NCBI RefSeq assembly: GCF_964188315.1
Contig: NC_135662.1
Location: 45,384,001 to 45,448,000 of the forward strand
Length of the DNA stretch: 64,000 nt
Direction of reading: 5' to 3'
Origin: Podarcis muralis
Lineage: Eukaryota
The translations under genes and the position numbers were made by a program. The stretch's first letter is position 1. Each line of letters begins with the position of its first letter. Of the stretch, positions 6,621-60,091 are shown one piece after another. The notes under the pieces are model-generated. The model did not search any database and was not told where the DNA came from. It saw only the letters and a list, made by a program, of their open reading frames with translations.

Positions 6621-7171
6621 CTGAAAAATAAAGCAATTGAAACCAATTAAGTTCTCTGCTGAATAGCCAAAATATCTCAACACAAAGGCAGGAAGGAAAG
6701 ACCAGACAAATTATTCAGTTCACCATCCTCCCCACTCAGGAGTCTGTAGCAATAACGAAAACAAGAATGTCTAGAAACAAAAGGGGCTTTAAAAAAATAA
6801 TAGAATGAAGCGATATATTTAAAAATGAAAAACAGAACTTCCTGGATTCTGTTACAGATCCCAGGAAAGATGAGATAGGGAAATGGAAGAATGATGTGTA
6901 TTTTCATAACCACCAGAATTCTCTGTAATAGTGCAAACCAAAATGTTTTTCAGTTTTTAAACACTTCATAATGAGTAAAGTTCCTTTTGCTAACAAAAGT
7001 AACTGGATTGTGCAAGGAGGTCTTCTCTAAAATATGTTTGCTTCCTCTTTTCCCTCCTCTTCTAAGTCTGTTAACACACTCCCATTTACCCTGCATCCAG
7101 TATGCTCCCGCCCCTGGTTCGGGAAGTGATCTATACACAAAATTAGCCACAATGTGTTGTTTCTTATAAAA

Positions 7172-7351: not shown

Positions 7352-7687
7352 TTATAAAATACTGCATTGTGATGCATTTCCCTTAAAACCAGCTTTGACT
7401 ATTGCGAGAGAGAGAAAAAATGCCCTGGGTGTAAAGCCAGTAATGTGTGCACAACCTAAGCTGTAGGAAAGTGGTGCAAAACGCAACATAGAATGGAAAA
7501 GGTGTTACGTCTAGGTAATGTGTTGGACCAAAGGGAAGGGAAAGATCAAAGGCACCCAACAGAGGAAGGGCAAAGAATAAAGCACCGATTAACTGAGGAC
7601 TGATTGGCAACAGATTGTGCATGAATTGTGACAAGTGGATACGGTGGTCTAGGAAGGGATCGGAGGATAGACATGAGAGGTGTAAAG

Positions 7688-23848: not shown

Positions 23849-26464
23849 TAAAGTAAGGTACCACTGTAAAGAGGCCCAATGTGTATTATTCTACCCTCCA
23901 TCACTGCCCATATATTTTGAGGGAGAGAAATAATGTGAAATGAGCATCTACATGATTGGGTCCATAAAGTCAGGCCTACTTCTCAATGAAGGCTATTTGC
24001 ATGATGAGGAGCAAAGGGTCATGTTGCTCAGTCAAATTATTTCAATACTGCCCCTGTGAACATGTGACTGTGGATGAAATGTAGATTCAGAGTTGGCGTG
24101 ATGTTAGATCTGCCAGCTTATTAATTCATGTAGCTGTCAGCACCCTTCTTGCATTGGCGGGGAAACATTTTTATTTATTTATTTATTTATTTTTATTCCA
24201 AAATGTAAGCCACTCTACATTCAAAAAAGTACCTAAGCAGTGTACAGAAACAGAATATAAAATATAATGCAGAACACAAAAAAAGTATTAAAACATATTT
24301 GCGTGTGTGGATCAGTTTGGATCAGCTTGCTTTTGTTTTATTATGTATTTTGTGTTCTCAGTTTTGTATTTCCATGTTGTGAACCACTCCTATGATCTTT
24401 GGATGAAGGGTGGTATACAAATTTAATAAATAAAATAAATAAATAAAATCATAATGAAAATTTGAAGAAATAAACTAAATTGGAAAGCCATGGTAGAAGG
24501 CTTCCTTCACTTCTAAGGGAAGAGAAATCCAGGGAAAGCATGGTGTTAATAGTGCTCACAAAAATGATTTCCACAAATAGGACATGCAAGTAGATTACTT
24601 ACAACAATTTGCACAAGTTAACTGGCAGATAGCACAGCCTAACTAGCTGTCTATTTATTATGGCAAAGTAACAAGTGTGGCCCCTTTTCCTTTTATGCAT
24701 GTTGAATATAATTTTCAGGTTTTGGTAGCCATCTGCAGAGATCAGAACACATCTCCAGATGCAGCTAGTAGCTTTTACTGTGTGATCATCTCAGTGCTGA
24801 CAACAACCCCCATAATCTTCATAGTTAAGAAATGGGATGTTTTGTCTTGACAGACCATCCTAATTGATAATCATGCATTTGCTCTGTCAATTTCTCTGTG
24901 CACTGATTAGCAATTCTCTTATCAGTGGATGCATATCTAGTCCTTCAGTTTATGAGACTCAGCAGAACTTTCTAACAAGCTGAAGCCTTAGAACCTCTCT
25001 GCACAAATGAACATTAGACTGAAAGGAATGTTTAAGCTGTACGGTCTTAATTCATACAACATTCTGTTTGTTTTCCTTTCCTTTCTCCCATTAATAGGTT
25101 TCTTTTTATTTGCTACCTAGATTCATAGATGTGCTTTCCCTTCCTGAAAGAGGGATACAAATAAAGATTTGGCTCACTCCCATCCCTCTTAATGTCTTTA
25201 CAAGGTTTGCCTTCCTCAGGCAGCAAATTGTGAATTACACTGAGTCAGAGTATTATCAACCCTGAAGCACACCACTAAAGAAAAAATCTATACTTGGCAA
25301 CTTCATTGCTGTCACAATATGCAATGAATTATGTGAGATTATAGTCTCTGAAATGCTTCCTGACTAAATGGACCTAAACTTGTATTTTTGTTTTACAAAA
25401 CTAGACTGACAAAAGAAAGCATAAAATGTGGATGATAAAAGTTTTTAAGGGACGTGTACTTCAATCTTTTGGAAGATAGCAACACATGTTTTTATTTTTG
25501 ACATTTTTTATTGTTAAATCTCGTCAAGTTGTTTTATGGGGAAGTGATCTGTAAATAAAATAAACAAATAAATAAATACAGAATTTCCCACTAACATTTA
25601 CCCAGAGAATTTCCAAACCAGCACTATGCTTTCTGCACCTACTAAATTTGGGAGGCTGCCAATGCTGGGGTGGAAACAGCAGATAGATACAGTGGCTGGT
25701 GCTACATGTTATGACTATGTGTACAGGCCATTTTCAACAGATTCCACATGCTGTTTGGAATGTGTACACCCATAACTCAAGATAAATTTCTGCTAATGCA
25801 ATGTGGTTACTTAACCATTACAGATTGTTTATTTCTCATTCAGGGAGAAATTCTGAATTAATACTGTTTCAGAATGACAGCAAAGTGGAAAAGAAGATGA
25901 AGTTGAGAAGACATGGATATGGAAAGATTTAAAAAATTTGTCTCTGGAGGTTCCTAGAAATATGTACAAACTGGTATAGTGGAGTTCCATATGATTTGGT
26001 TTAACCTAACTAAGGTCTTTAACTGTGATGGTTAAGGTTTCAGAGGCCTGGTAGCAAATATGCTTTGCATTATGCGATCTCACTGCTTTGCATGTTTCAG
26101 GCATTTCTTATTTAACTTATTCAGCCTCAACAGGTTATAGTCTCGACCATGATGGTAAACCCATGCCTTGATTAAAAAACACATGCACACAGAAAAGTAA
26201 GTATCATGGGGAAACTAGGCTACAGCCCTTGTCCCAGAGGTGCTAGATTTCTATTTGCAGAATATTTTTTATGGAGGATCATTCAGTCTTGTGAGTTCCC
26301 AGATGTAGTCTGAAGTTGGTATAGTACAGGAAAAGAGAGTTACCACATCACCGAGAACTAGGTCTAGAGTCCTTGAAGATTCGTAGGATTGTACAATTTA
26401 ACTATTATAGTTGTCTCTCCTGGACCTTCTACCATTGGATGATCCACTGTTGCAAGAGCAAGAC

Positions 26465-26570: not shown

Positions 26571-29246
26571 GGGCACTGGTCTTTAGCTGATGGGAGAGGA
26601 CCCACTTCTGGGTTACAGCCTGGTCTAAGGCGAGTCACAACAGCAGACCACCACAAAAATATATCACTTAAAAATTAAAGGAACAGGTCCCCAAATGCAT
26701 GTTTGAGTTAAAGGTGGACCGTAATCTGAAAAAAAAGGAAGGCTGCAGTTATAGGGGACTTGCTCCACTGCCCTGATCAATCTGATTGCTCTTTTCTGCA
26801 GCCTGTTTGGAAATCTGGACTGTCATGCCCTGTCTTGATGATGGTCTGGGCTAAGAGTCCTCTTCGCATCCCACCCTGAGCCTTAAAGAGATGAGGCAAA
26901 TCTCAGCTACAGCAAGAGCATAGGAGAAAAGTTGCCTGTGTCTAACTCCTTTTCTTCATCCTACTGCCCAATAGTCAGGGTAGGTGGGTAGGAGGGGGAG
27001 ATGATATCAATTAAGATGGGGGGTGAAGAAGAGAGCAGCAGTAATATATTTATTAACATGGTGTCTAATTAAATCAGGGACACTTTTTAAAAATGCATGG
27101 AAATGATTAATCAAAAGCTGCAACCCTAATTTAAAGTCTTTTCAGATAAATTATTAACATGGTGGCATTCATGGAAGGAAAGCTTTTACAGATAAAAAAA
27201 CCACACAGAAGTACATGTGTGAAGTACAGGGCCCTCCATTTCAGATTCATTAACAGCCAACAAAAAACCAGGAACAGGAGTAGAAAACATAATCTGAAAA
27301 CCAAGAGAGAATATAAAGAATTTACTAAATGGCACACCATTAAAATATGAGAGGCCTGAGAGATTAAAACTATTCACCGTCAGATACCCCTTTATTAAAT
27401 TAGAGAGAAAACAGGCACTTCCAAAAAAGAAAAAAGAAAAAAGGAACATGTCCCTTTTACAATGACAAAAAACTATAAAAACTATTGCTAAAGAATATTC
27501 CTCAGACAGACCATGGCAATCAATAGAGTGCTGGGGCAAAGATGTACTTGAAATCCTAGGTGTATGGAATGTCAAATTTCTAAGCAAACAGAAAAACATT
27601 TATTTGTTTCCATCCATTCTAGGCAGTGTTCAAAACTCCCATTGAGCTCTGGGCAGAGTAGTGCACCTAAGATTTCAGATTAAAACTGCGGAGTGAAAGG
27701 AAAGGAGGGCCTATTTCTGCCTCCCTACTTCCAGCTACTTTCTGAAGACTGGAGAAGAGACCCTCTTAAGAATATTAGGGCGGTGGGCAGAATGACTAGA
27801 CCATGTGAAAAGTGAGCATAATATTTCATTTTCAGCTTTGTATTCTTGTTATTTAAAAAGTGCACATAGACATTCTGCTGTTGTGCCCATAACCTAAGTT
27901 TAAGTTGTCATTTAGCTCCTAGCTTTCGTATCTCAGTTTCTAACACTGATTATAGGTTCCTAAGGGTTGAAAACATCTGGCTTGAAAACCTTTATTGATG
28001 AAACTCAGGTGTTCAAATAGTTGTGACTACTCAGTAGCAAGGGAAAGGCAGTCTGGATATACTCAAAAGCACTCTTGCCTTCATTGTAGCATCCCATGTT
28101 GCAGAGATGAGACAGGTTCTAAAGGCAGGACTTCAGAATTAAGCTCTAGCAGTGTCAGTGAAACAAAGCATCTTAAACTCCACTAAAACCATCTAAATGC
28201 ACCCTGAATTTACAGTGAATTTACTGCAATTCCCCCTCTCCTTTCTTATACACAAAAACATCAACAGCTTTATTGGACGGGGGCTGTGTGCGTGTGTGTG
28301 TGTTTGGGGGGGGAGTAGGCTGGTAATTTTATTTCTTGTGAACACATGCACAACTCAAACCCAAACCACACTAATTAAATATAATCTAGTATGTTAAATA
28401 TAATCCAGTATGTAATTACCTAAACTGCTAACACAAACAGAAAAGACAAGGAACTCTGATTATAGCTTTACAGCATATTCAGAAGCTTTGTGAAAACAAA
28501 AATGCACAGTGCACCAGGTCTTGCATGATGTAGCCGGTCACAAAAAGTGACTGTATTACTTTGCTGATAATGGATGGAACAGATCCTACCAAAGATATCA
28601 ATTCTTTCAACTGGAAGTTCAAATTGCAGGAACATTACAAGGTCAAAAAGCATACAGCGTAACAAATGACTGAAGAAAAACCGGACCCTTTTCTTTCAAT
28701 TCTCCCCTTCTTCTAATCCTCACATGGCTTCTCTTTGATAATGTCTATCTAAAGGCTCACCTTGAGTTGCATTAATGTCTTTCGGCAAGCAATTTCAGGG
28801 CTGCACCTACTCATCCTGCTGATAAGGCTTGTCTGCCTACAAGGCACTGCTTCCACATTTATAAGGGGCAAAAGGTTGCCCCTGAGTTGAGTATTTCTTG
28901 GGTTTATGCCAAGAATGTGCATACTTAATTATTCATTTTATATCTAAATCACTCAGAAAATTCAAACACAGTAAATGTAACTAGATAAAGTGAATAAGAC
29001 TGAAAAATTAAGTTCATCAATCAATTTGACTCTCTGAAGAATGCAAAATTCTTGGTGGGGAATTTACTGCGAAAGTATTATAAAAGTGCTCAGTGGACTA
29101 CACTGGGGTAGTCACTTGAAACAGTCCCAAAAAGAGGAACTACATCCCCCACGAAACAGAATAAGATTTGTGTCACATGTGTATATGCTAATTATAGGGG
29201 TGATACTGTTTTGCTTGTTTATTTTTTGTTATGTATTCTGTGTTTG

Positions 29247-30248
29247 TTATGTACTGAAGTTCTCACCCTGGGCCAGCAGGGGGATACTGTAGATAGTTAT
29301 GCAAATAAGGGATCGAAAGTGACATTCAGCTTGCGTCGTGTAGGCGAGTCGGTTTGGCCAATCGTGGTTCCAGACGGGCAGTGGCAGTTGGTGAGAGCGA
29401 AACAGCTTTCCTTGGCGGACTGGAGTGAAGACTTGGACTTGCGAGTCGGTGAAGGGGGGGGTGTCAGACGGAGCCGATCGGCAGACCTTAGCGATGTGGC
29501 CCCTTCTGGAACACTTCCGACAGATGGCATCTCTGAATCGACACTTGGCATGGGAATGGTGGCCTCCGCAGCCGGCACATTCCGATTGGCCCTTGGACTT
29601 CTTTTGGAACTTCCTGCACTCCCGCTTTGTCTGGTGCACGTCATCGTTTTCACTGGAGGATGCCTTATCACTGCTGGCCTCTTCATGATGCACTGGAACT
29701 GGCTTCCTAGCAAGACGCGGGCTGCTGGCCTTGTGGATCTCCTGGGGGGAGCGTTCGGCAGCTTCCGAAGCCACGGCCTCCTCAATGGCTTTCTGCAGCG
29801 TGAGGTCTGGCTTGGCAAGGAGACGCCGTTGCAGATGGATGTCCCGGACCCCGCAGATGATTCGATCCATCAGGGCATCGTCTAAGTCTCGGAACTCGCA
29901 GTGCATTGCAGCCTGTCGGAGGGCGGCGGTGTAGTTGTTAATTGACTCCCCCTCTGCCTGGTTCCGGTGGCAGAACGCATGGCGGGCAGCAATCTTGGAC
30001 ACGTAGTGGTTGTGGAGCTTCTCTTTAATCATGTCCCACGGTGCTGCCTGGACTGCTACAGGCGCAACCAATGCTTGGGCCGTCTCGAACACCTCAGGTC
30101 CACAGAGGCTGAGGAATAGGCCCCGCTTACATTCCTGTGATACTTCCATCAGCTCGTTGGCTTGGAGGTAGTAGTTGAACCGAGCGAGGTAGGAGTCCCA
30201 TGATTCAGAGGCTGGCGCAAATGGCGGTAGAGGCACAAGTGAAGCCAT
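29247..30248 (-). CDS. Retrotransposon Gag-like ORF (333 aa as read; capsid-like N-terminus plus CCHC knuckle CRKCSRRGHIAKVC)
   Basis: PPF..SESWDSYLARF, LFLSLCGPE, RHAFxxRxQxEGES, LMDRIICG and LTLQKAIEEA are typical of Mag/K02A2.6-type Gag. The tail after about residue 265 is probably frameshifted at a C8 run (29454-29461). Confidence 0.85.
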   Translation of the reverse strand: MASLVPLPPFAPASESWDSYLARFNYYLQANELMEVSQECKRGLFLSLCGPEVFETAQALVAPVAVQAAPWDMIKEKLHNHYVSKIAARHAFCHRNQAEGESINNYTAALRQAAMHCEFRDLDDALMDRIICGVRDIHLQRRLLAKPDLTLQKAIEEAVASEAAERSPQEIHKASSPRLARKPVPVHHEEASSDKASSSENDDVHQTKRECRKFQKKSKGQSECAGCGGHHSHAKCRFRDAICRKCSRRGHIAKVCRSAPSDTPPFTDSQVQVFTPVRQGKLFRSHQLPLPVWNHDWPNRLAYTTQAECHFRSLICITIYSIPLLAQGENFST

Positions 30249-30410
30249 GATTCAGATACCGATGTGGAGGCGATGGATGGAACACAGTGCTCTAGCCAGA
30301 ACAGTGAGCTCTGAATTGGTTCTGTTCAGTGATTTCGCTCGGTGTTTCAGCTCAGTAATTCAGCTCCGCTCAGAGGGTGGCTGCATCTGGCTGTGCTCTG
30401 TTGTCCATCC

Positions 30411-30428
30411 ATCCCATCCTCGTCACCA
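30411..30428 (-). promoter_or_regulatory. Primer-binding site TGGTGACGAGGATGGGAT, complementary to the tRNA-Ser(GCU) 3' end (17/18)
   Basis: Lies 1 nt downstream of the LTR end. The recalled vertebrate tRNA-Ser(GCU) 3' end gives TGGCGACGAGGATGGGAT. Confidence 0.8.
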
Positions 30429-33084
30429 GTGTTAGGTTGTGGGTGAACATATCAGATGACACAGCGATTCTTCAAACAGCTCTTATTTATTCACAGGCCA
30501 GGACAGAACTGAAGGGTTCAGTCAGCCTGCTTATATAGAACTCCAGTACAATGTAACTGTAACAATTTTCTAAAACTATCCAATCACTAAACGTCACTTT
30601 CGATCCCTTATTTGCATAACTATCTACAGTATCCCCCTGCTGGCCCAGGGTGAGAACTTCAGTACATAACAGTGTTCTCATTTTGTATTTTTATGTTGTG
30701 AACGGTCCTGTGATCTTTGGAGAAAGGGTGGCTTACTAATAATACTACTAGAAATAATAGTAACGTGAGACCTGCCACATTTTTTTTTGCTGTGTAGTTC
30801 TCAGTGCCTAACAGTAAATGTTCCTTTTAAGGGTTCCAAACTTAACTCTCCTCACTATACTCCATTCCATCACCCCTGTTTTCTATTTTTGTTTTCCAAC
30901 TGATACTAAACAGCCAGTGACTACTGAGCATGCTCAGTCCTCATGGGCTTGTTTGTGGGTGGGTTTCCCCCACATATCTTTAAAATATATTATTTAATAC
31001 ATTTGGGGTTCCCCAAATCAAACTGACACCTCCCGCTTGTTTCACAGTAGCTCTGTTTTGGCCCATTTCAGTTGGTACTCAGCACCCTAGTTCACTATTA
31101 AAGGGAGTGATTAAATTCTTTGGAGTCTGATTTTTTTAATAAAAAAAAAAAACTCCAAGTGGGAGGTAGTGCCATTTTAAAATAAACATTTCCACATCTC
31201 ACATCAGAGACTTCTTTTAAGATGGTGCCCACTTCATCATGTGCATGTTTCGCCTAAAAACAAAGGAATGATCCTGTTTTCTTAAGAAGCGTTGTTTTTA
31301 TTCACATACAAATCCTCACGGATTTAATCTACTGTATTCTAATTAATGACTAGAAAGTATGTTTGCCATTTCATCACAGTCAACTGATCTGTAAAATACA
31401 GTAAATAAGAATGGCAAGGGCTCGTCTCTGCAGGTACACTGATTCTAAGAGCAACCTGAAAGACAGAAAACAGGCCTCACCCTTCACTGATCTGAAGGCA
31501 ACAACCTTTATTGTGAACTGGTCTACAATGCAAAACTTTCAGGGAAAGCATATCAACACTTTATGCAAAATATGAAATCCATTGTCTTCACTTCCTATTG
31601 GCATGTTATATTTATCTCGTGGCTTTAGAATTCAATAAATATTTCAGTCACCAAGAAATAAACTCTAGATGACACCTTGTTCCACAGTCTGCAACTGAAA
31701 CATGTTGCTAAGGAAATGAGAAGTGGAGAAAGTTTTACTTGGTATTTTGTTAGGATGTGGTGATTTAAAACAAAACAAAACTATTTTCATGCAGTGTAAG
31801 AACTTAATTTGTATTCTGTGTCTGGTTCTGGGTTAGGAATCTAAATAAAACAGGAATCTAAATAAAAAAGGTTCACTATTTTGCGAAGACACCAATATCT
31901 AAAGTTAGTCCGCATATGCTTGAGTTCGGCCAAACAGAAGAAAATGTGAAGGGAAAACAAAAACTCAAGAGTCATTTACAATTTATATGTTTCACTTTGA
32001 AGTCTGTTGCTAGAATCACATAAGAACATGCTGAAGCCAAAGCAAACTAATATATCATCAGTATATTCTACTGGCATAGCTGGTTCTGTCAGGGGATTTC
32101 TCTATGAGCAGAAGGCTGTTCTCCCTCCATTTCCTATCGAAAAGTATGACTGTGAATGCTTCTTGCAGTCTAAGAATGACTAATTTGCATTATGCTTGGA
32201 AACTTCCAGTGCAGTGCAGTCTTAAGCATACAGTATTTAAGCAGAAGTCAGTCCCACACAGTTCTATGGGATTTTCTCACTTGTAAGTTTAGTAAGGATT
32301 TCCCTGCTATGAAAAACAAAGCAACAATTAGATAAAACAATGCCGAATGACATAAACATTCAAGTCTTGGAGAAATAGTGAAAGAAGTACCAGTAAAGAA
32401 AAGAAAATTTATGTAGATGTCACACTCCAGATACCACTTTTCTTTAGAAGGTAGCAAGTTCCAAAACAAAGCATGTAAAGAAACCAATATCCATGATGCA
32501 TGACTACAGCTGGTATTTAGCTGATAACGCCTGAAGGAAAATATGCCATATATCACTTTAGACATGGAACAACACCAGAGATAGTAAACACAGAAGCATA
32601 GTTACTGTCAATAAAAAAAAACTACTGATACTAGTCCAAAACAACAGGGAGTCATTTACAGAGAGTGAAATTCCCACAGTATAAATGATGCAATTTTGAT
32701 TATAGACACTGACGGCAGGAAAGTAGGCATGAAGCTGAAATGCACTTTTCAAAAGTAAAAGTACAGCTGATGGCAGATTATTATTTTTAGTCCCTACAGA
32801 TCAACAGTTAAGGTGGGAAAGTGTAAGCAGCAATAACCATTTGTAGCTGTTCTTGTGGCTCTTCTGAAAAGCACACAAGACATTCCACTGATTTCACCGG
32901 CACAATGCTGAACAGAAACCAGTATTTACAGCTAGACTAAATATTTGATGCCTTTCTGTAAACTGGGAACAAGGTCTGTTGCCCAAAGGAATTAATAAAT
33001 AAAGGCATCCTCACTGTGACAAAGGAGAGAAGCCATAATAAAAAAATGCACCTGTGCCACGTGAATTCCTATACAAGTGTACAA

Positions 33085-58800: not shown

Positions 58801-59947
58801 TGGAAATTTCAGCTGGTGCAGAATTCAGCAGCATATTTCACCAATTCCAGCCTGACAGTGGTACAGTGTTACTCTTGTCCTTCCTGCTCCCCATTTCACC
58901 TCATGTCTATACTGATTCTAACAGGATAATATATTAATGTTCCTTTAGAATGGGATGTCTGTTGCCAGATTTTTATTTATTTTAGAATTTTAGAACAGGT
59001 GTGTTTTACAATCTTTTTCCTCTTTAAAAGTTTGGTACACTGTTTCCTGCTTCAGGGTAATGAGTCTAGGCGACCTTTAGCTTCTTTGCAGTTTGACAGT
59101 TCTAAGGTTCTGAAAACAATGTACAGTATATTCCCACTGACCTGAATAACAGCTACAAACTCACACATAAAGGCTCTCTAAGAAGGCTCCATAATACTTC
59201 AAGAGGGAGTACATTTACTCCCCTTTGCGTTTACTAAGATAATATGCTGTGCTTCAAGCCATGGTCCCCGTCAGAACTGTATGATACAGATATTGTGCAG
59301 TACCACATTGTCTGTATGTATTCAGAAATCTCTTTCTTAAAGCTAAATTCTTGCTTCAGTTGAACTAGAAATCTAACAGCTTGCAAATTCCAAACACTGA
59401 GGAATCATAAAAACGGTCTAATATATAATGCCAAAAGGGGCATATCATGTAGGCAGTGAGTAGAAAATATCAGTTTCTGAAGAGCTTTAGAAAACGTGTG
59501 GGATTTTAAAGGCTGGTTTACACATTCAAGTTCTGGTGACTGAAGGGATGAAAAGCATGGGCAAAACAAACATCACATACAACACATTCACATCACCTCC
59601 CATGCAGTGCTTATCCATGGAGTCAGTTCACACATTCAGCTGACCTAAGATTTTCTGCTGTGGTAATGGTGGGCCTTAAGGCCAGTCCCTAAGTTTTCCC
59701 TACTTCCATCGACAAAGAAAAGAGGAAAGCAGAGGAACCTAACATCTATTTTTTTAAAAAAATAATCTCAAGAAAGGGTTTAGGCAGAGTTCCACAGTGC
59801 GCTGCATTCTTTCTTAGGATTTTATTTCATTTATGAAGCTTAGTGTACCAAAAAAGGTGCCTTTTGGGCAGGGTTTTTATTTTAACCAAACAACACGAAA
59901 CACTATCATATTGGCTGTACAAAATAATGAATGTAGTCAACCCATAT

Positions 59948-60091
59948 GATAGCTCAGTTGGTAGAGCATGAGACTCTTAATCTCAGGGTCATAGGTTTGA
60001 GCCCCATGTTGGGCAAAAGATTCCTGCAGCGCAGGGGGTTGGACTAAATGACCCTCGTGGTCCCTTCTAATTCTACAAATTCTATGATTCT
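59948..60091 (+). mobile_element. tRNA-Lys(CUU)-derived SINE with CR1-type ATTCTATG tail
   Basis: Head TAGCTCAGTTGGTAGAGCATGAGACTCTTAATCTCAGGGTC resembles tRNA-Lys(CUU) and continues into a CR1 3' end. Confidence 0.85.

What the first reader, a model, noticed from the sequence alone, without database searches (positions are those of the whole stretch)
29240..30676. LTR retroelement integrated with two inverted U3 ends and an intact TSD
Seen: on the minus strand the insert reads complete 242-bp LTR, tRNA-Ser PBS, then gag. Instead of pol and a direct 3' LTR it ends in a perfect 79-bp inverted copy of the start of the same LTR (29245-29323 equals the reverse complement of 30593-30671). The 1427-bp unit is flanked by the direct repeat GTGTT. 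The junction lies in a patch of partial homology (gag side CTGAATGTCAC, LTR CTAAACGTCAC). Established: Ty3/Gypsy integrase normally joins one U3 end and one U5 end, leaving direct LTRs and a 4-6 bp TSD. A simple post-insertion deletion would leave a U5 end, not a second U3 end. Inference: integrase used two U3 ends. One route is two cDNA molecules integrated head-to-head at one site and then joined by microhomology-mediated repair. Another is a copy-back (panhandle) cDNA made by RT template switching, analogous to defective-interfering viral genomes. The product looks like a TIR-bounded DNA transposon carrying gag. If the same junction recurs at other loci, it would be an undescribed mobilisable non-autonomous element class.
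Basis: partly seen in the sequence, partly recalled or inferred. Interest (0 to 1): 0.82.

Follow-up and report, generated by a model that had tools for sequence, protein, structure and literature searches.

The report
Retrotransposon inserted with two U3 ends
A lizard Ty3/Gypsy retrotransposon copy went into the genome as a broken 1.4-kb DNA whose two tips are both the "left" (U3) end of the element, still with a normal 5-bp insertion footprint; it is a rare, apparently one-off accident of the element's copying machinery, not a new kind of mobile element.

Summary
Window 29245-30671 is a 1427-bp insert with TG..CA tips. On the minus strand it reads a 242-bp LTR, a PBS and gag. It ends in an inverted copy of U3 nt 1-85 (79 nt perfect, 83/85 overall) and is flanked by GTGTT on both sides.

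- **The duplication is real.** A paralogous copy of the host repeat in the same window (24325-24422) runs unbroken across the insertion point with a single GTGTT.
- **The family is ordinary.** It is a lacertid (Podarcis-type) Ty3/Gypsy family with direct LTRs, PR-RT-RH-IN order and 5-bp TSDs, seen in natural P. lilfordi copies.
- **The junction sits on built-in homology.** The gag/pro boundary carries the exact reverse complement of U3 nt 74-85. This 12-nt match is the longest LTR-versus-interior inverted match in copy L004.

Best reading: an aberrant linear cDNA with two U3 termini formed before integration, by a strand switch or annealing at this patch. The element's integrase then inserted it in one concerted reaction.

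I found no sign of propagation, but the test was limited. None of 10 P. lilfordi copies has the junction. The copy's most diagnostic private letters sit at about single-copy read depth. Its gag decays neutrally (13 nonsynonymous, 5 synonymous changes). Independent reads across the inner junction could not be inspected.

I rate it a neat natural curiosity of moderate interest.

The parts
29240..29244 (.). Left copy of the 5-bp target-site duplication GTGTT
   Evidence: The paralogous uninterrupted host repeat at 24325-24422 has a single GTGTT.
29245..29329 (+). Inverted arm: U3 nt 1-85 of the same LTR, read on the + strand, so opposite in orientation to the rest of the element
   Evidence: 85 nt, 98%; 79 nt identical; unique to these two places in the window.
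29318..29329 (.). Junction patch: 12 nt shared by U3 nt 74-85 and the reverse complement of the gag/pro boundary. This copy has one transition here, at a CpG
   Evidence: exact 12-mer in L004 at both places, 11/12 in L001, L005 and L006. (longest LTR-versus-interior inverted match in L004).
29330..30248 (-). gag (capsid-like part plus two CCHC knuckles at 29481-29579), cut off exactly where protease begins in full-length relatives. The open frame 29247-30248 (333 aa) runs on into the inverted arm
   Evidence: ORFs; 82-88% identity to Podarcis gag proteins; relatives continue into the protease motif after the breakpoint.
29452..29462 (-). G-run where this copy's gag frame shifts relative to most family members (a one-base length difference)
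   Evidence: alignment changes frame after the knuckles; table 4 (277 of 344 reads differ in length at 29454).
30411..30428 (-). Primer-binding site, starting TGG one base after the LTR
   Evidence: The tRNA identity was not tested.
30430..30671 (-). Complete 242-bp 5' LTR (TGTTA...TAACA); its first 85 nt (30587-30671) form the other arm of the inverted repeat
   Evidence: LTR ends agree with P. lilfordi LTRs.
30672..30676 (.). Right copy of the target-site duplication GTGTT
24325..24422 (+). Paralogous copy of the host interspersed repeat into which the element inserted; it serves as the empty-site control
   Evidence: The same repeat explains the roughly 70-fold excess read depth at 30692-30758 and the 52-54 contigs per run that place left-flank-like sequence directly before GTGTT (tables 2 and 7).

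Best explanation
This is a single, dead-end insertion of an aberrant cDNA from an ordinary lacertid Ty3/Gypsy family.

Before integration, a linear DNA formed that carried a U3 terminus at both ends. It consisted of the 5' LTR, PBS and gag on one side and an inverted U3 nt 1-85 on the other. The two parts met in a 12-nt stretch where U3 nt 74-85 is the exact reverse complement of the gag/pro boundary.

The most likely way to make it is a strand switch during plus-strand DNA synthesis. A nascent plus strand primed at the polypurine tract reaches U3 nt 85. Its 3' end then anneals to the complementary 12-mer on a plus-sense strand at the gag/pro boundary and copies that strand back to its U3 start. 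Annealing and repair between two extrachromosomal cDNAs would give the same molecule.

Both tips were then authentic TGTTA... U3 ends. The family's integrase inserted the molecule in one normal concerted reaction, producing the family's usual 5-bp duplication.

The copy has no pol, no polypurine tract and no direct 3' LTR (no second R), so it cannot be copied again. It has since decayed neutrally.

Shown: the anatomy, the duplication, the family's normal structure, the 12-nt inverted homology and the neutral decay. Inferred: the timing (before integration), the enzyme that made the junction, and that integrase acted on one molecule.
For: Anatomy and uniqueness of the inverted arms.

The TSD is genuine. 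A paralogous uninterrupted host repeat has one GTGTT. In each of runs X1 and X13, 52-54 contigs place left-flank-like sequence directly before GTGTT (table 7).

The family normally makes 5-bp TSDs with TG..CA LTRs: solo LTRs in L002 (CAAAA, AAAAC), L003 (4 of 5) and L005 (GATAT), all.

The family has direct LTRs and PR-RT-RH-IN order.

The U3 and U5 tips share TGTTA.GT, so a U3/U3 pair offers integrase nearly the same terminal bases as U3/U5.

The 12-nt patch is a family feature. It is present in 12 of 13 P. lilfordi LTR copies, exact at the gag/pro boundary of L004, and 11/12 in L001, L005 and L006. At 30589, 1056 of 1078 reads carry the family letter that completes the match (table 3). It is the longest LTR-versus-interior inverted match in L004 and ties for longest in L005.

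The flanks are direct, not inverted. This contrasts with L004, where a host-level palindromic duplication carries the flank along with the U3 start.

An independent individual (run X1, flank 0.6% different) has a contig running from the left flank 25 nt into the + oriented U3 start (table 8).

One-off status: no such junction in 10 P. lilfordi copies or 37 homologues. The most diagnostic window-private letters are carried by only 0-8 of about 200-400 reads, where single-copy depth is about 2-3.

Neutral decay: 13 nonsynonymous and 5 synonymous private changes, 9 of the 18 at CpG.

Precedents for TSD-bounded complex elements formed before integration: PMC1950507 and bioRxiv 10.1101/452573. Integrase assembling on two copies of one LTR end in vitro: PMC11054761.
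Against: No independent read or contig across the inner junction (about 29318-29330) could be inspected. The read tables were cut to the best-supported rows and no long-read run was listed.

The X1 contig overlaps the element by 25 letters, below the tool's 31-letter rule for bridging.

Recurrence was tested only in another species' assembly and indirectly by read depth, not by a genome-wide search of this assembly.

The sequence alone cannot tell a reverse-transcriptase strand switch from host repair of two cDNAs. It also cannot strictly exclude a post-insertion rearrangement.

In the simplest strand-switch scheme, one strand needs extra trimming or extension to give two blunt ends. That step is conjecture.
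Confidence: 0.64

Rival explanations
1. Two separate cDNA molecules were each joined to the target by their U3 end in one two-donor concerted reaction. The two free inner ends were then resected and joined by host microhomology-mediated repair at the 12-nt patch.
For: It gives the same final structure: 5-bp TSD, U3 tips and a junction in 12-nt homology. Integrase complexes built on two separate DNA ends work in vitro (PMC11054761).
Against: It needs an intasome that bridges two different cDNA molecules in vivo, plus loss of 157 nt of LTR and several kb from the inner ends, with the join landing exactly on the longest inverted homology. A preformed single molecule needs fewer coincidences. There is no direct evidence either way.
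Confidence: 0.12
2. A normal full-length copy inserted here. A later replication error with two template switches then deleted pol and the 3' LTR and filled in a templated inverted copy of U3 nt 1-85. The first switch used the 12-nt patch. The second used the 5-nt TAACA that the inverted U3 start shares with the U5 end.
For: Both microhomologies exist in the element. Deletions are common in this family: L001, L004, L008 and L010. A host-level inverted duplication of a U3 start is seen in L004.
Against: The second switch must fall within the last 5 nt of the LTR to mimic a perfect integrase-made end. Any other position would leave inverted flank or U5 sequence, as in L004 where the flank is inverted too. 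Run X1 shows the same U3-type left boundary rather than a U5 end (table 8).
Confidence: 0.08
3. The same U3/U3 product forms repeatedly, or is somehow mobilised, so it is a multi-copy class of inverted-repeat-bounded gag elements.
For: The 12-nt inverted homology is built into the family and often present in 2-3 tandem copies in U3, so the same accident could recur. The family is abundant: gag depth is about 400 and LTR depth about 2300, against about 2-3 for unique flank.
Against: None of 10 P. lilfordi gag-bearing copies and none of 37 homologous proteins shows the junction. The most diagnostic private letters of this copy are at about single-copy depth. The element lacks a second R, a PPT and pol, so it has no known route of replication. 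Retroviral-type integrases do not excise DNA (established knowledge). The family's real non-autonomous derivative keeps two direct LTRs (L010).
Confidence: 0.06
4. Assembly artefact: a fold-back or chimeric join inside a repeat.
For: The inner junction was not seen in independent reads (tables were cut; one search listed no long-read run). The family is highly repeated.
Against: The join lies in a 12-nt biological homology, not at a random point. The arms are only 85 nt and differ by two substitutions, unlike a fold-back read. The unit is framed by a verified 5-bp duplication. The left boundary is seen in another individual's contigs (table 8). Long-read assemblers do not join on 12 nt.
Confidence: 0.04

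Closest known systems
TSD-bounded complex LTR retrotransposons made by template switching or extrachromosomal recombination before integration (Sabot and Schulman 2007, PMC1950507; Zeng and Sun 2018, bioRxiv 10.1101/452573)
   Same: An abnormal cDNA architecture framed by a single target-site duplication, best explained by an event before integration. L005 in P. lilfordi looks like such a three-LTR complex of this very family.
   Different: Those elements have three direct LTRs and normal U3 and U5 outer ends. Here the second end is an inverted partial U3, and pol and the 3' LTR are missing.
Autointegration products of Ty1, retroviruses and Arabidopsis SISYPHUS (inversion and deletion circles; PMC7197481 and Garfinkel et al. 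2006, cited there)
   Same: Aberrant cDNA forms that carry inverted or deleted segments and one LTR.
   Different: In autointegration the LTR tip itself is joined to an internal site, and the products are circles that do not reach the chromosome. Here the join is inside U3 (nt 74-85) at a homology patch. Both tips stayed free and were integrated with a TSD.
Concerted integration in vitro by intasomes assembled on two copies of one LTR end (reviewed in PMC11054761; PFV integrase, PMC2615609)
   Same: Integrase pairs two like ends and makes the correct staggered cut and duplication.
   Different: Those are test-tube reactions with oligonucleotides. This would be a natural chromosomal example with a Ty3/Gypsy integrase.
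DIRS-type retroelements with inverted terminal repeats
   Same: A retroelement with gag and inverted termini.
   Different: By established knowledge, DIRS elements use a tyrosine recombinase, make no TSD, and carry inverted repeats in every full-length member. This family has an rve integrase, direct LTRs and 5-bp TSDs.
Copy-back defective genomes of RNA viruses
   Same: By analogy only: the polymerase leaves its template and copies back along a strand of the opposite sense, giving complementary termini.
   Different: Those are replicating RNA molecules. This is a DNA product that cannot replicate.
Non-autonomous LTR derivatives (LARD or TRIM types; L010-type internal deletion of this family)
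   Same: They lack pol and are short. L010 is 1.37 kb.
   Different: They keep two direct LTRs, a PBS and a PPT, and so can be copied in trans. The L010-type breakpoint recurs in three proteins encoded at separate places in the P. lilfordi assembly. The window element has none of the 3' signals.

Membership tests
Ty3/Gypsy (Metaviridae) LTR retrotransposon | LTR with TG..CA termini followed by a PBS | tested here: met
   242-bp LTR TGTTA...TAACA, then TGG-initiated PBS one base later. The same ends occur in P. lilfordi LTRs.
Ty3/Gypsy (Metaviridae) LTR retrotransposon | pol domain order PR-RT-RNase H-integrase in full-length relatives | tested here: met
   L002 pieces hit RT_RNaseH_2, Integrase_H2C2 and rve above Pfam's cut-offs, in that order. 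Asp_protease and RVT_1 hit upstream below cut-off. Full-length alignments exist in L003, L005 and L009.
Ty3/Gypsy (Metaviridae) LTR retrotransposon | gag with CCHC zinc knuckle | tested here: met
   Two knuckles lie at aa 224-236 and 243-256 and are invariant in the alignment. Pfam itself gave no hit for this gag.
Ty3/Gypsy (Metaviridae) LTR retrotransposon | Short fixed-length target-site duplication | tested here: met
   5 bp here and in four relatives.
Ty3/Gypsy (Metaviridae) LTR retrotransposon | Two direct LTRs with a PPT before the 3' LTR (in this copy) | tested here: not met
   The 3' side is an inverted U3 nt 1-85 with no PPT. So this is a derivative of the family, not a canonical member copy.
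Ty3/Gypsy (Metaviridae) LTR retrotransposon | PBS complementary to a specific host tRNA (tRNA-Ser claimed) | not testable with these tools
   No tRNA-Ser gene was found in the window or loci. The resemblance to tRNA-Ser(GCT) rests on memory only.
DIRS-like retroelement | Tyrosine recombinase, inverted terminal repeats in full-length members, no TSD | tested here: not met
   rve integrase, direct LTRs, 5-bp TSDs.
TIR DNA transposon or new mobilisable IR-bounded class | Several copies with the same termini and internal junction at different sites with different TSDs | tested here: inconclusive
   No second copy in the window, in 10 P. lilfordi loci or among 37 homologues. The most diagnostic private letters are at single-copy depth. 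A genome-wide search of this assembly was not possible.
TSD-bounded complex element formed before integration (Sabot-Schulman type) | Abnormal internal architecture inside one intact TSD | tested here: met
TSD-bounded complex element formed before integration (Sabot-Schulman type) | Three direct LTRs sharing one internal LTR | tested here: not met
   Only one full LTR plus an inverted 85-nt piece.

The most novel reading that the evidence does not exclude
The 12-nt inverted homology between U3 and the gag/pro boundary is built into this family and often sits in 2-3 tandem U3 copies. The same U3/U3-ended cDNA may therefore form again and again. If so, lacertid genomes would hold several independent insertions with the identical junction but different 5-bp duplications. 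That would be a natural, countable record of copy-back cDNA formation. It would also show in vivo that a Ty3/Gypsy integrase accepts two U3 ends. The same complementarity might also pair the gag/pro boundary with the 3' U3 in the genomic RNA.
Probability: 0.13. Interest if true: 0.6.

Novelty: new variant of a known kind. Interest (0 to 1): 0.42.

Why it matters
LTR-retroelement integrases are assumed to pair one U3 end with one U5 end in cells. Pairing of two like ends is known from test-tube reactions. I found no report of a chromosomal insertion bounded by two U3 ends inside an intact duplication, in four full-text literature searches.

This copy is a clean natural example. It shows that a misassembled cDNA can still be a good integrase substrate. 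It also shows that short inverted homology inside an element can steer what misassembled products arise.

It has a practical side for annotation. Such copies look like TIR-bounded DNA transposons carrying gag and could be misclassified.

It does not reveal a new class of mobile element.

Tried and rejected
**Searches that gave nothing**
- Long-read validation: a search for PacBio runs listed none.
- Read support for the inner junction: the single read-laying run returned only the best-supported loose ends and joints, so junction-spanning reads and the expected gag-to-protease loose ends were not shown. No conclusion is drawn from that.
- Exact-protein look-up of the 333-aa ORF: not on record.
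- Pfam on this gag: no hit.
- Earlier notes of this scan: nothing on this structure.
- Literature: four searches found complex direct-LTR elements and autointegration circles, but no U3/U3-bounded insertion.

**Readings rejected**
- DIRS-like inverted repeats: relatives have direct LTRs and an integrase.
- Autointegration: the junction is inside U3, not at an LTR tip.
- Host inverted duplication of the L004 kind: here the flanks are direct and contiguous in the paralogue.
- Domesticated or selected gag: 13 nonsynonymous against 5 synonymous private changes, half of them at CpG, plus a frame shift after the knuckles.

**Left tentative**
- Contigs that look like empty sites, in organism B (X13), in X1, and in one X23 read, may come from the orthologous site or from paralogues of the host repeat. 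I treat them as tentative (tables 5 and 5c).
Full report
**What is there.** Window 29245-30671 is a 1427-bp insert with TGTTA...TAACA tips. The two ends form an inverted repeat, arms 29245-29329 and 30587-30671. It is 85 nt long and 98% complementary, and the outer 79 nt are identical. The 30-nt terminal sequence occurs only at these two places in the 64-kb window, with none expected by chance. GTGTT stands directly outside both tips, at 29240-29244 and 30672-30676.

On the minus strand the insert reads as follows:
- a 242-bp LTR (30671 to 30430), with a TATA-like box near nt 137 and AATAAA near nt 185, so nt 1-85 lie in U3;
- one spacer base;
- a TGG-initiated PBS (30428 to 30411);
- a leader;
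- gag from the ATG at 30248, with two CCHC-type knuckles.

The open frame of 333 aa runs through the junction into the inverted arm.

**Which element family.** The gag protein is 82-88% identical to many Podarcis lilfordi and P. muralis proteins, so the genome is a lacertid lizard. I fetched ten P. lilfordi loci that encode such proteins.
- Natural full-length copies (L003, L005, L009, and L002 12840-17712) are about 4.8-4.9 kb with two direct LTRs.
- Their pol pieces hit RNase H, the integrase zinc domain and the rve core above Pfam's cut-offs, in that order. Protease and RT hits lie upstream, below cut-off.
- This is an ordinary Ty3/Gypsy layout, not a DIRS-like one.
- The family's normal target-site duplication is 5 bp: solo LTRs in L002 (CAAAA and AAAAC), L003 (4 of 5) and L005 (GATAT).

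Laid reads put unique flank at about 2-3, gag at about 400 and the LTR at about 2300 (table 2). That implies on the order of a hundred or more gag-bearing copies and roughly a thousand LTRs at 90% likeness or better.

**Where gag is cut.** In relatives the protein continues from ...RRKLNV straight into the protease motif. In the window the native frame (the 173-aa ORF 29297-29818) reads ...RRKLNV and then enters the inverted U3. So the break is exactly at the gag/pro boundary. This copy's frame also shifts at the G-run 29452-29462, where it differs by one base in length from most family reads (table 4). That is why the long ORF is in another frame over its last 60 codons.

**The duplication is real.** The right flank 30672-30758 is itself part of a host interspersed repeat, with depth about 210. 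A paralogue of that repeat lies in the same window at 24325-24422. It aligns at 83% over 98 nt with the left flank joined to the right flank, runs straight across the insertion point, and contains one GTGTT.

In each of runs X1 and X13, 52-54 contigs place left-flank-like sequence directly before GTGTTCTCA (table 7). The whole 1427-bp unit therefore entered at one staggered 5-bp cut.

**The junction.** Nearly all family LTR reads have G at 30589, where this copy has A (1056 of 1078, table 3). The P. lilfordi sequences agree:
- U3 nt 74-85 reads AGTGACGTTCAG in 12 of 13 LTR copies, often in 2-3 tandem 47-nt units.
- The gag/pro boundary reads the exact reverse complement in L004.
- The boundary matches 11 of 12 in L001, L005 and L006.

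This 12-mer is the longest reverse-complementary match between LTR and interior in L004, and ties for longest in L005. The break therefore used the best inverted homology the element offers. The window copy now carries one transition on each side of the patch, one of them at a CpG. These are the only two differences between the 85-nt arms.

**Mechanism.** A plain deletion cannot put a U3 start next to the far duplication. Autointegration joins an LTR tip to an internal site and gives circles (PMC7197481). Here the join is inside U3 and both tips are free.

A host inverted duplication would carry inverted flank with it. L004 shows exactly that: arms 6995-7157 and 7484-7646 include 88 nt of flank. 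In the window the flanks are direct and contiguous.

The economical reading is that a linear cDNA with two U3 termini existed before integration. I favour a strand switch of a nascent plus strand. Primed at the polypurine tract, its 3' end lies at U3 nt 85. It moves onto the complementary 12-mer of a plus-sense strand at the gag/pro boundary and copies back to that strand's U3 start. Annealing and repair of two extrachromosomal cDNAs would give the same product.

The U3 and U5 tips share TGTTA.GT. Integrases can also assemble on two copies of one end in vitro (PMC11054761). A U3/U3 molecule is thus a plausible substrate for one concerted reaction.

TSD-bounded complex elements explained by events before integration are the nearest precedent (PMC1950507; 10.1101/452573), but those have direct LTRs only.

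**One-off or family?**
- None of the ten P. lilfordi copies has gag followed by inverted U3.
- No homologue ends in a peptide read from the inverted arm.
- At 18 gag positions this copy differs from more than 75% of family reads. At the most diagnostic of these (for example 29561, 29971, 30172) only 0-8 of about 200-400 reads carry its letter, which is about single-copy depth (table 3). Several others (for example 29529, 29603, 29618) are shared by some 20-40 reads and look like subfamily variants.
- Of the 18 changes, 13 are nonsynonymous and 5 synonymous, and 9 sit at CpG. This is neutral decay.
- About 2% private divergence in gag and 2 of 85 between the arms suggest an age of some millions of years. 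This rests on my own rough knowledge of squamate rates, with a wide margin.

The element has no second R, no PPT and no pol, so no known route copies it. The family's real non-autonomous derivative (L010, 1.37 kb) keeps two direct LTRs.

**Independent support and limits.** A contig of another individual (X1, flank 2 differences in 320 nt) runs from the left flank 25 nt into the + oriented U3 start. That is what a filled site with this unusual boundary predicts, but it falls short of the tool's 31-letter rule (table 8).

In organism B (flank about 4% different) the flank contig stops matching exactly at 29244, and single-copy-depth contigs skip the element (tables 5, 5c, 8). This suggests an empty site, although paralogues of the host repeat cannot be excluded.

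The inner junction itself was not seen in independent data. No long-read run was listed and the read tables were truncated.

All comparisons are with natural copies.

**Verdict.** The best reading is a single aberrant U3/U3 integration guided by 12-nt inverted homology. There is no evidence for a new mobilisable class.

Noticed in passing
L004:6995-7646 and L004:9950-16810: In P. lilfordi a copy of this family sits at the edge of a 176-bp satellite array (26.8 units at 90% match). Its U3 start plus 88 nt of flank is duplicated in inverted orientation (arms 6995-7157 and 7484-7646, 94%). This is a host-level palindromic rearrangement and makes a useful contrast to the window's case.
   Followed up: partly
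L010:6575-7950; proteins P0013, P0017, P0020: A 1.37-kb internally deleted derivative with two direct LTRs fuses the N-terminal half of gag to the last residues of integrase. The same fusion point appears in three proteins encoded at separate places in the P. lilfordi assembly, which suggests a propagated non-autonomous subfamily.
   Followed up: partly
L005:7589-13974: A three-LTR arrangement: LTR, interior, LTR, about 1 kb of other sequence, the last 210 nt of interior, then LTR. The outermost ends share the 5-bp GATAT. This is a complex element of the Sabot-Schulman kind in the same family.
   Followed up: no
window 30573-30618 (LTR nt 54-99); L002, L005, L006 LTRs: U3 holds a 46-47-nt unit that is single in the window's LTR but tandemly repeated 2-3 times in many family LTRs. 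About 190 reads per run show the extra unit. Another large subfamily diverges completely after LTR nt 54 (about 620 loose ends per run at 29298).
   Followed up: partly
window 29318-29329 and 30587-30598; L004:7645 and L004:8927: The 12-nt complementarity between U3 and the gag/pro boundary is kept in two lizard species. It could pair the 3' U3 with the gag/pro boundary within the genomic RNA. No covariation evidence exists, and it may be shared ancestry only.
   Followed up: no
window 29213-29244 plus 30672-30758; paralogue 24325-24422: The target is a T-rich end of a host interspersed repeat with roughly 70 copies at 90% likeness (read depth about 210 against 2-3). I did not identify its family.
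   Followed up: partly
window 59942-60014: A tRNA-Lys (CTT) gene on the + strand, the only tRNA found in the window.
   Followed up: no
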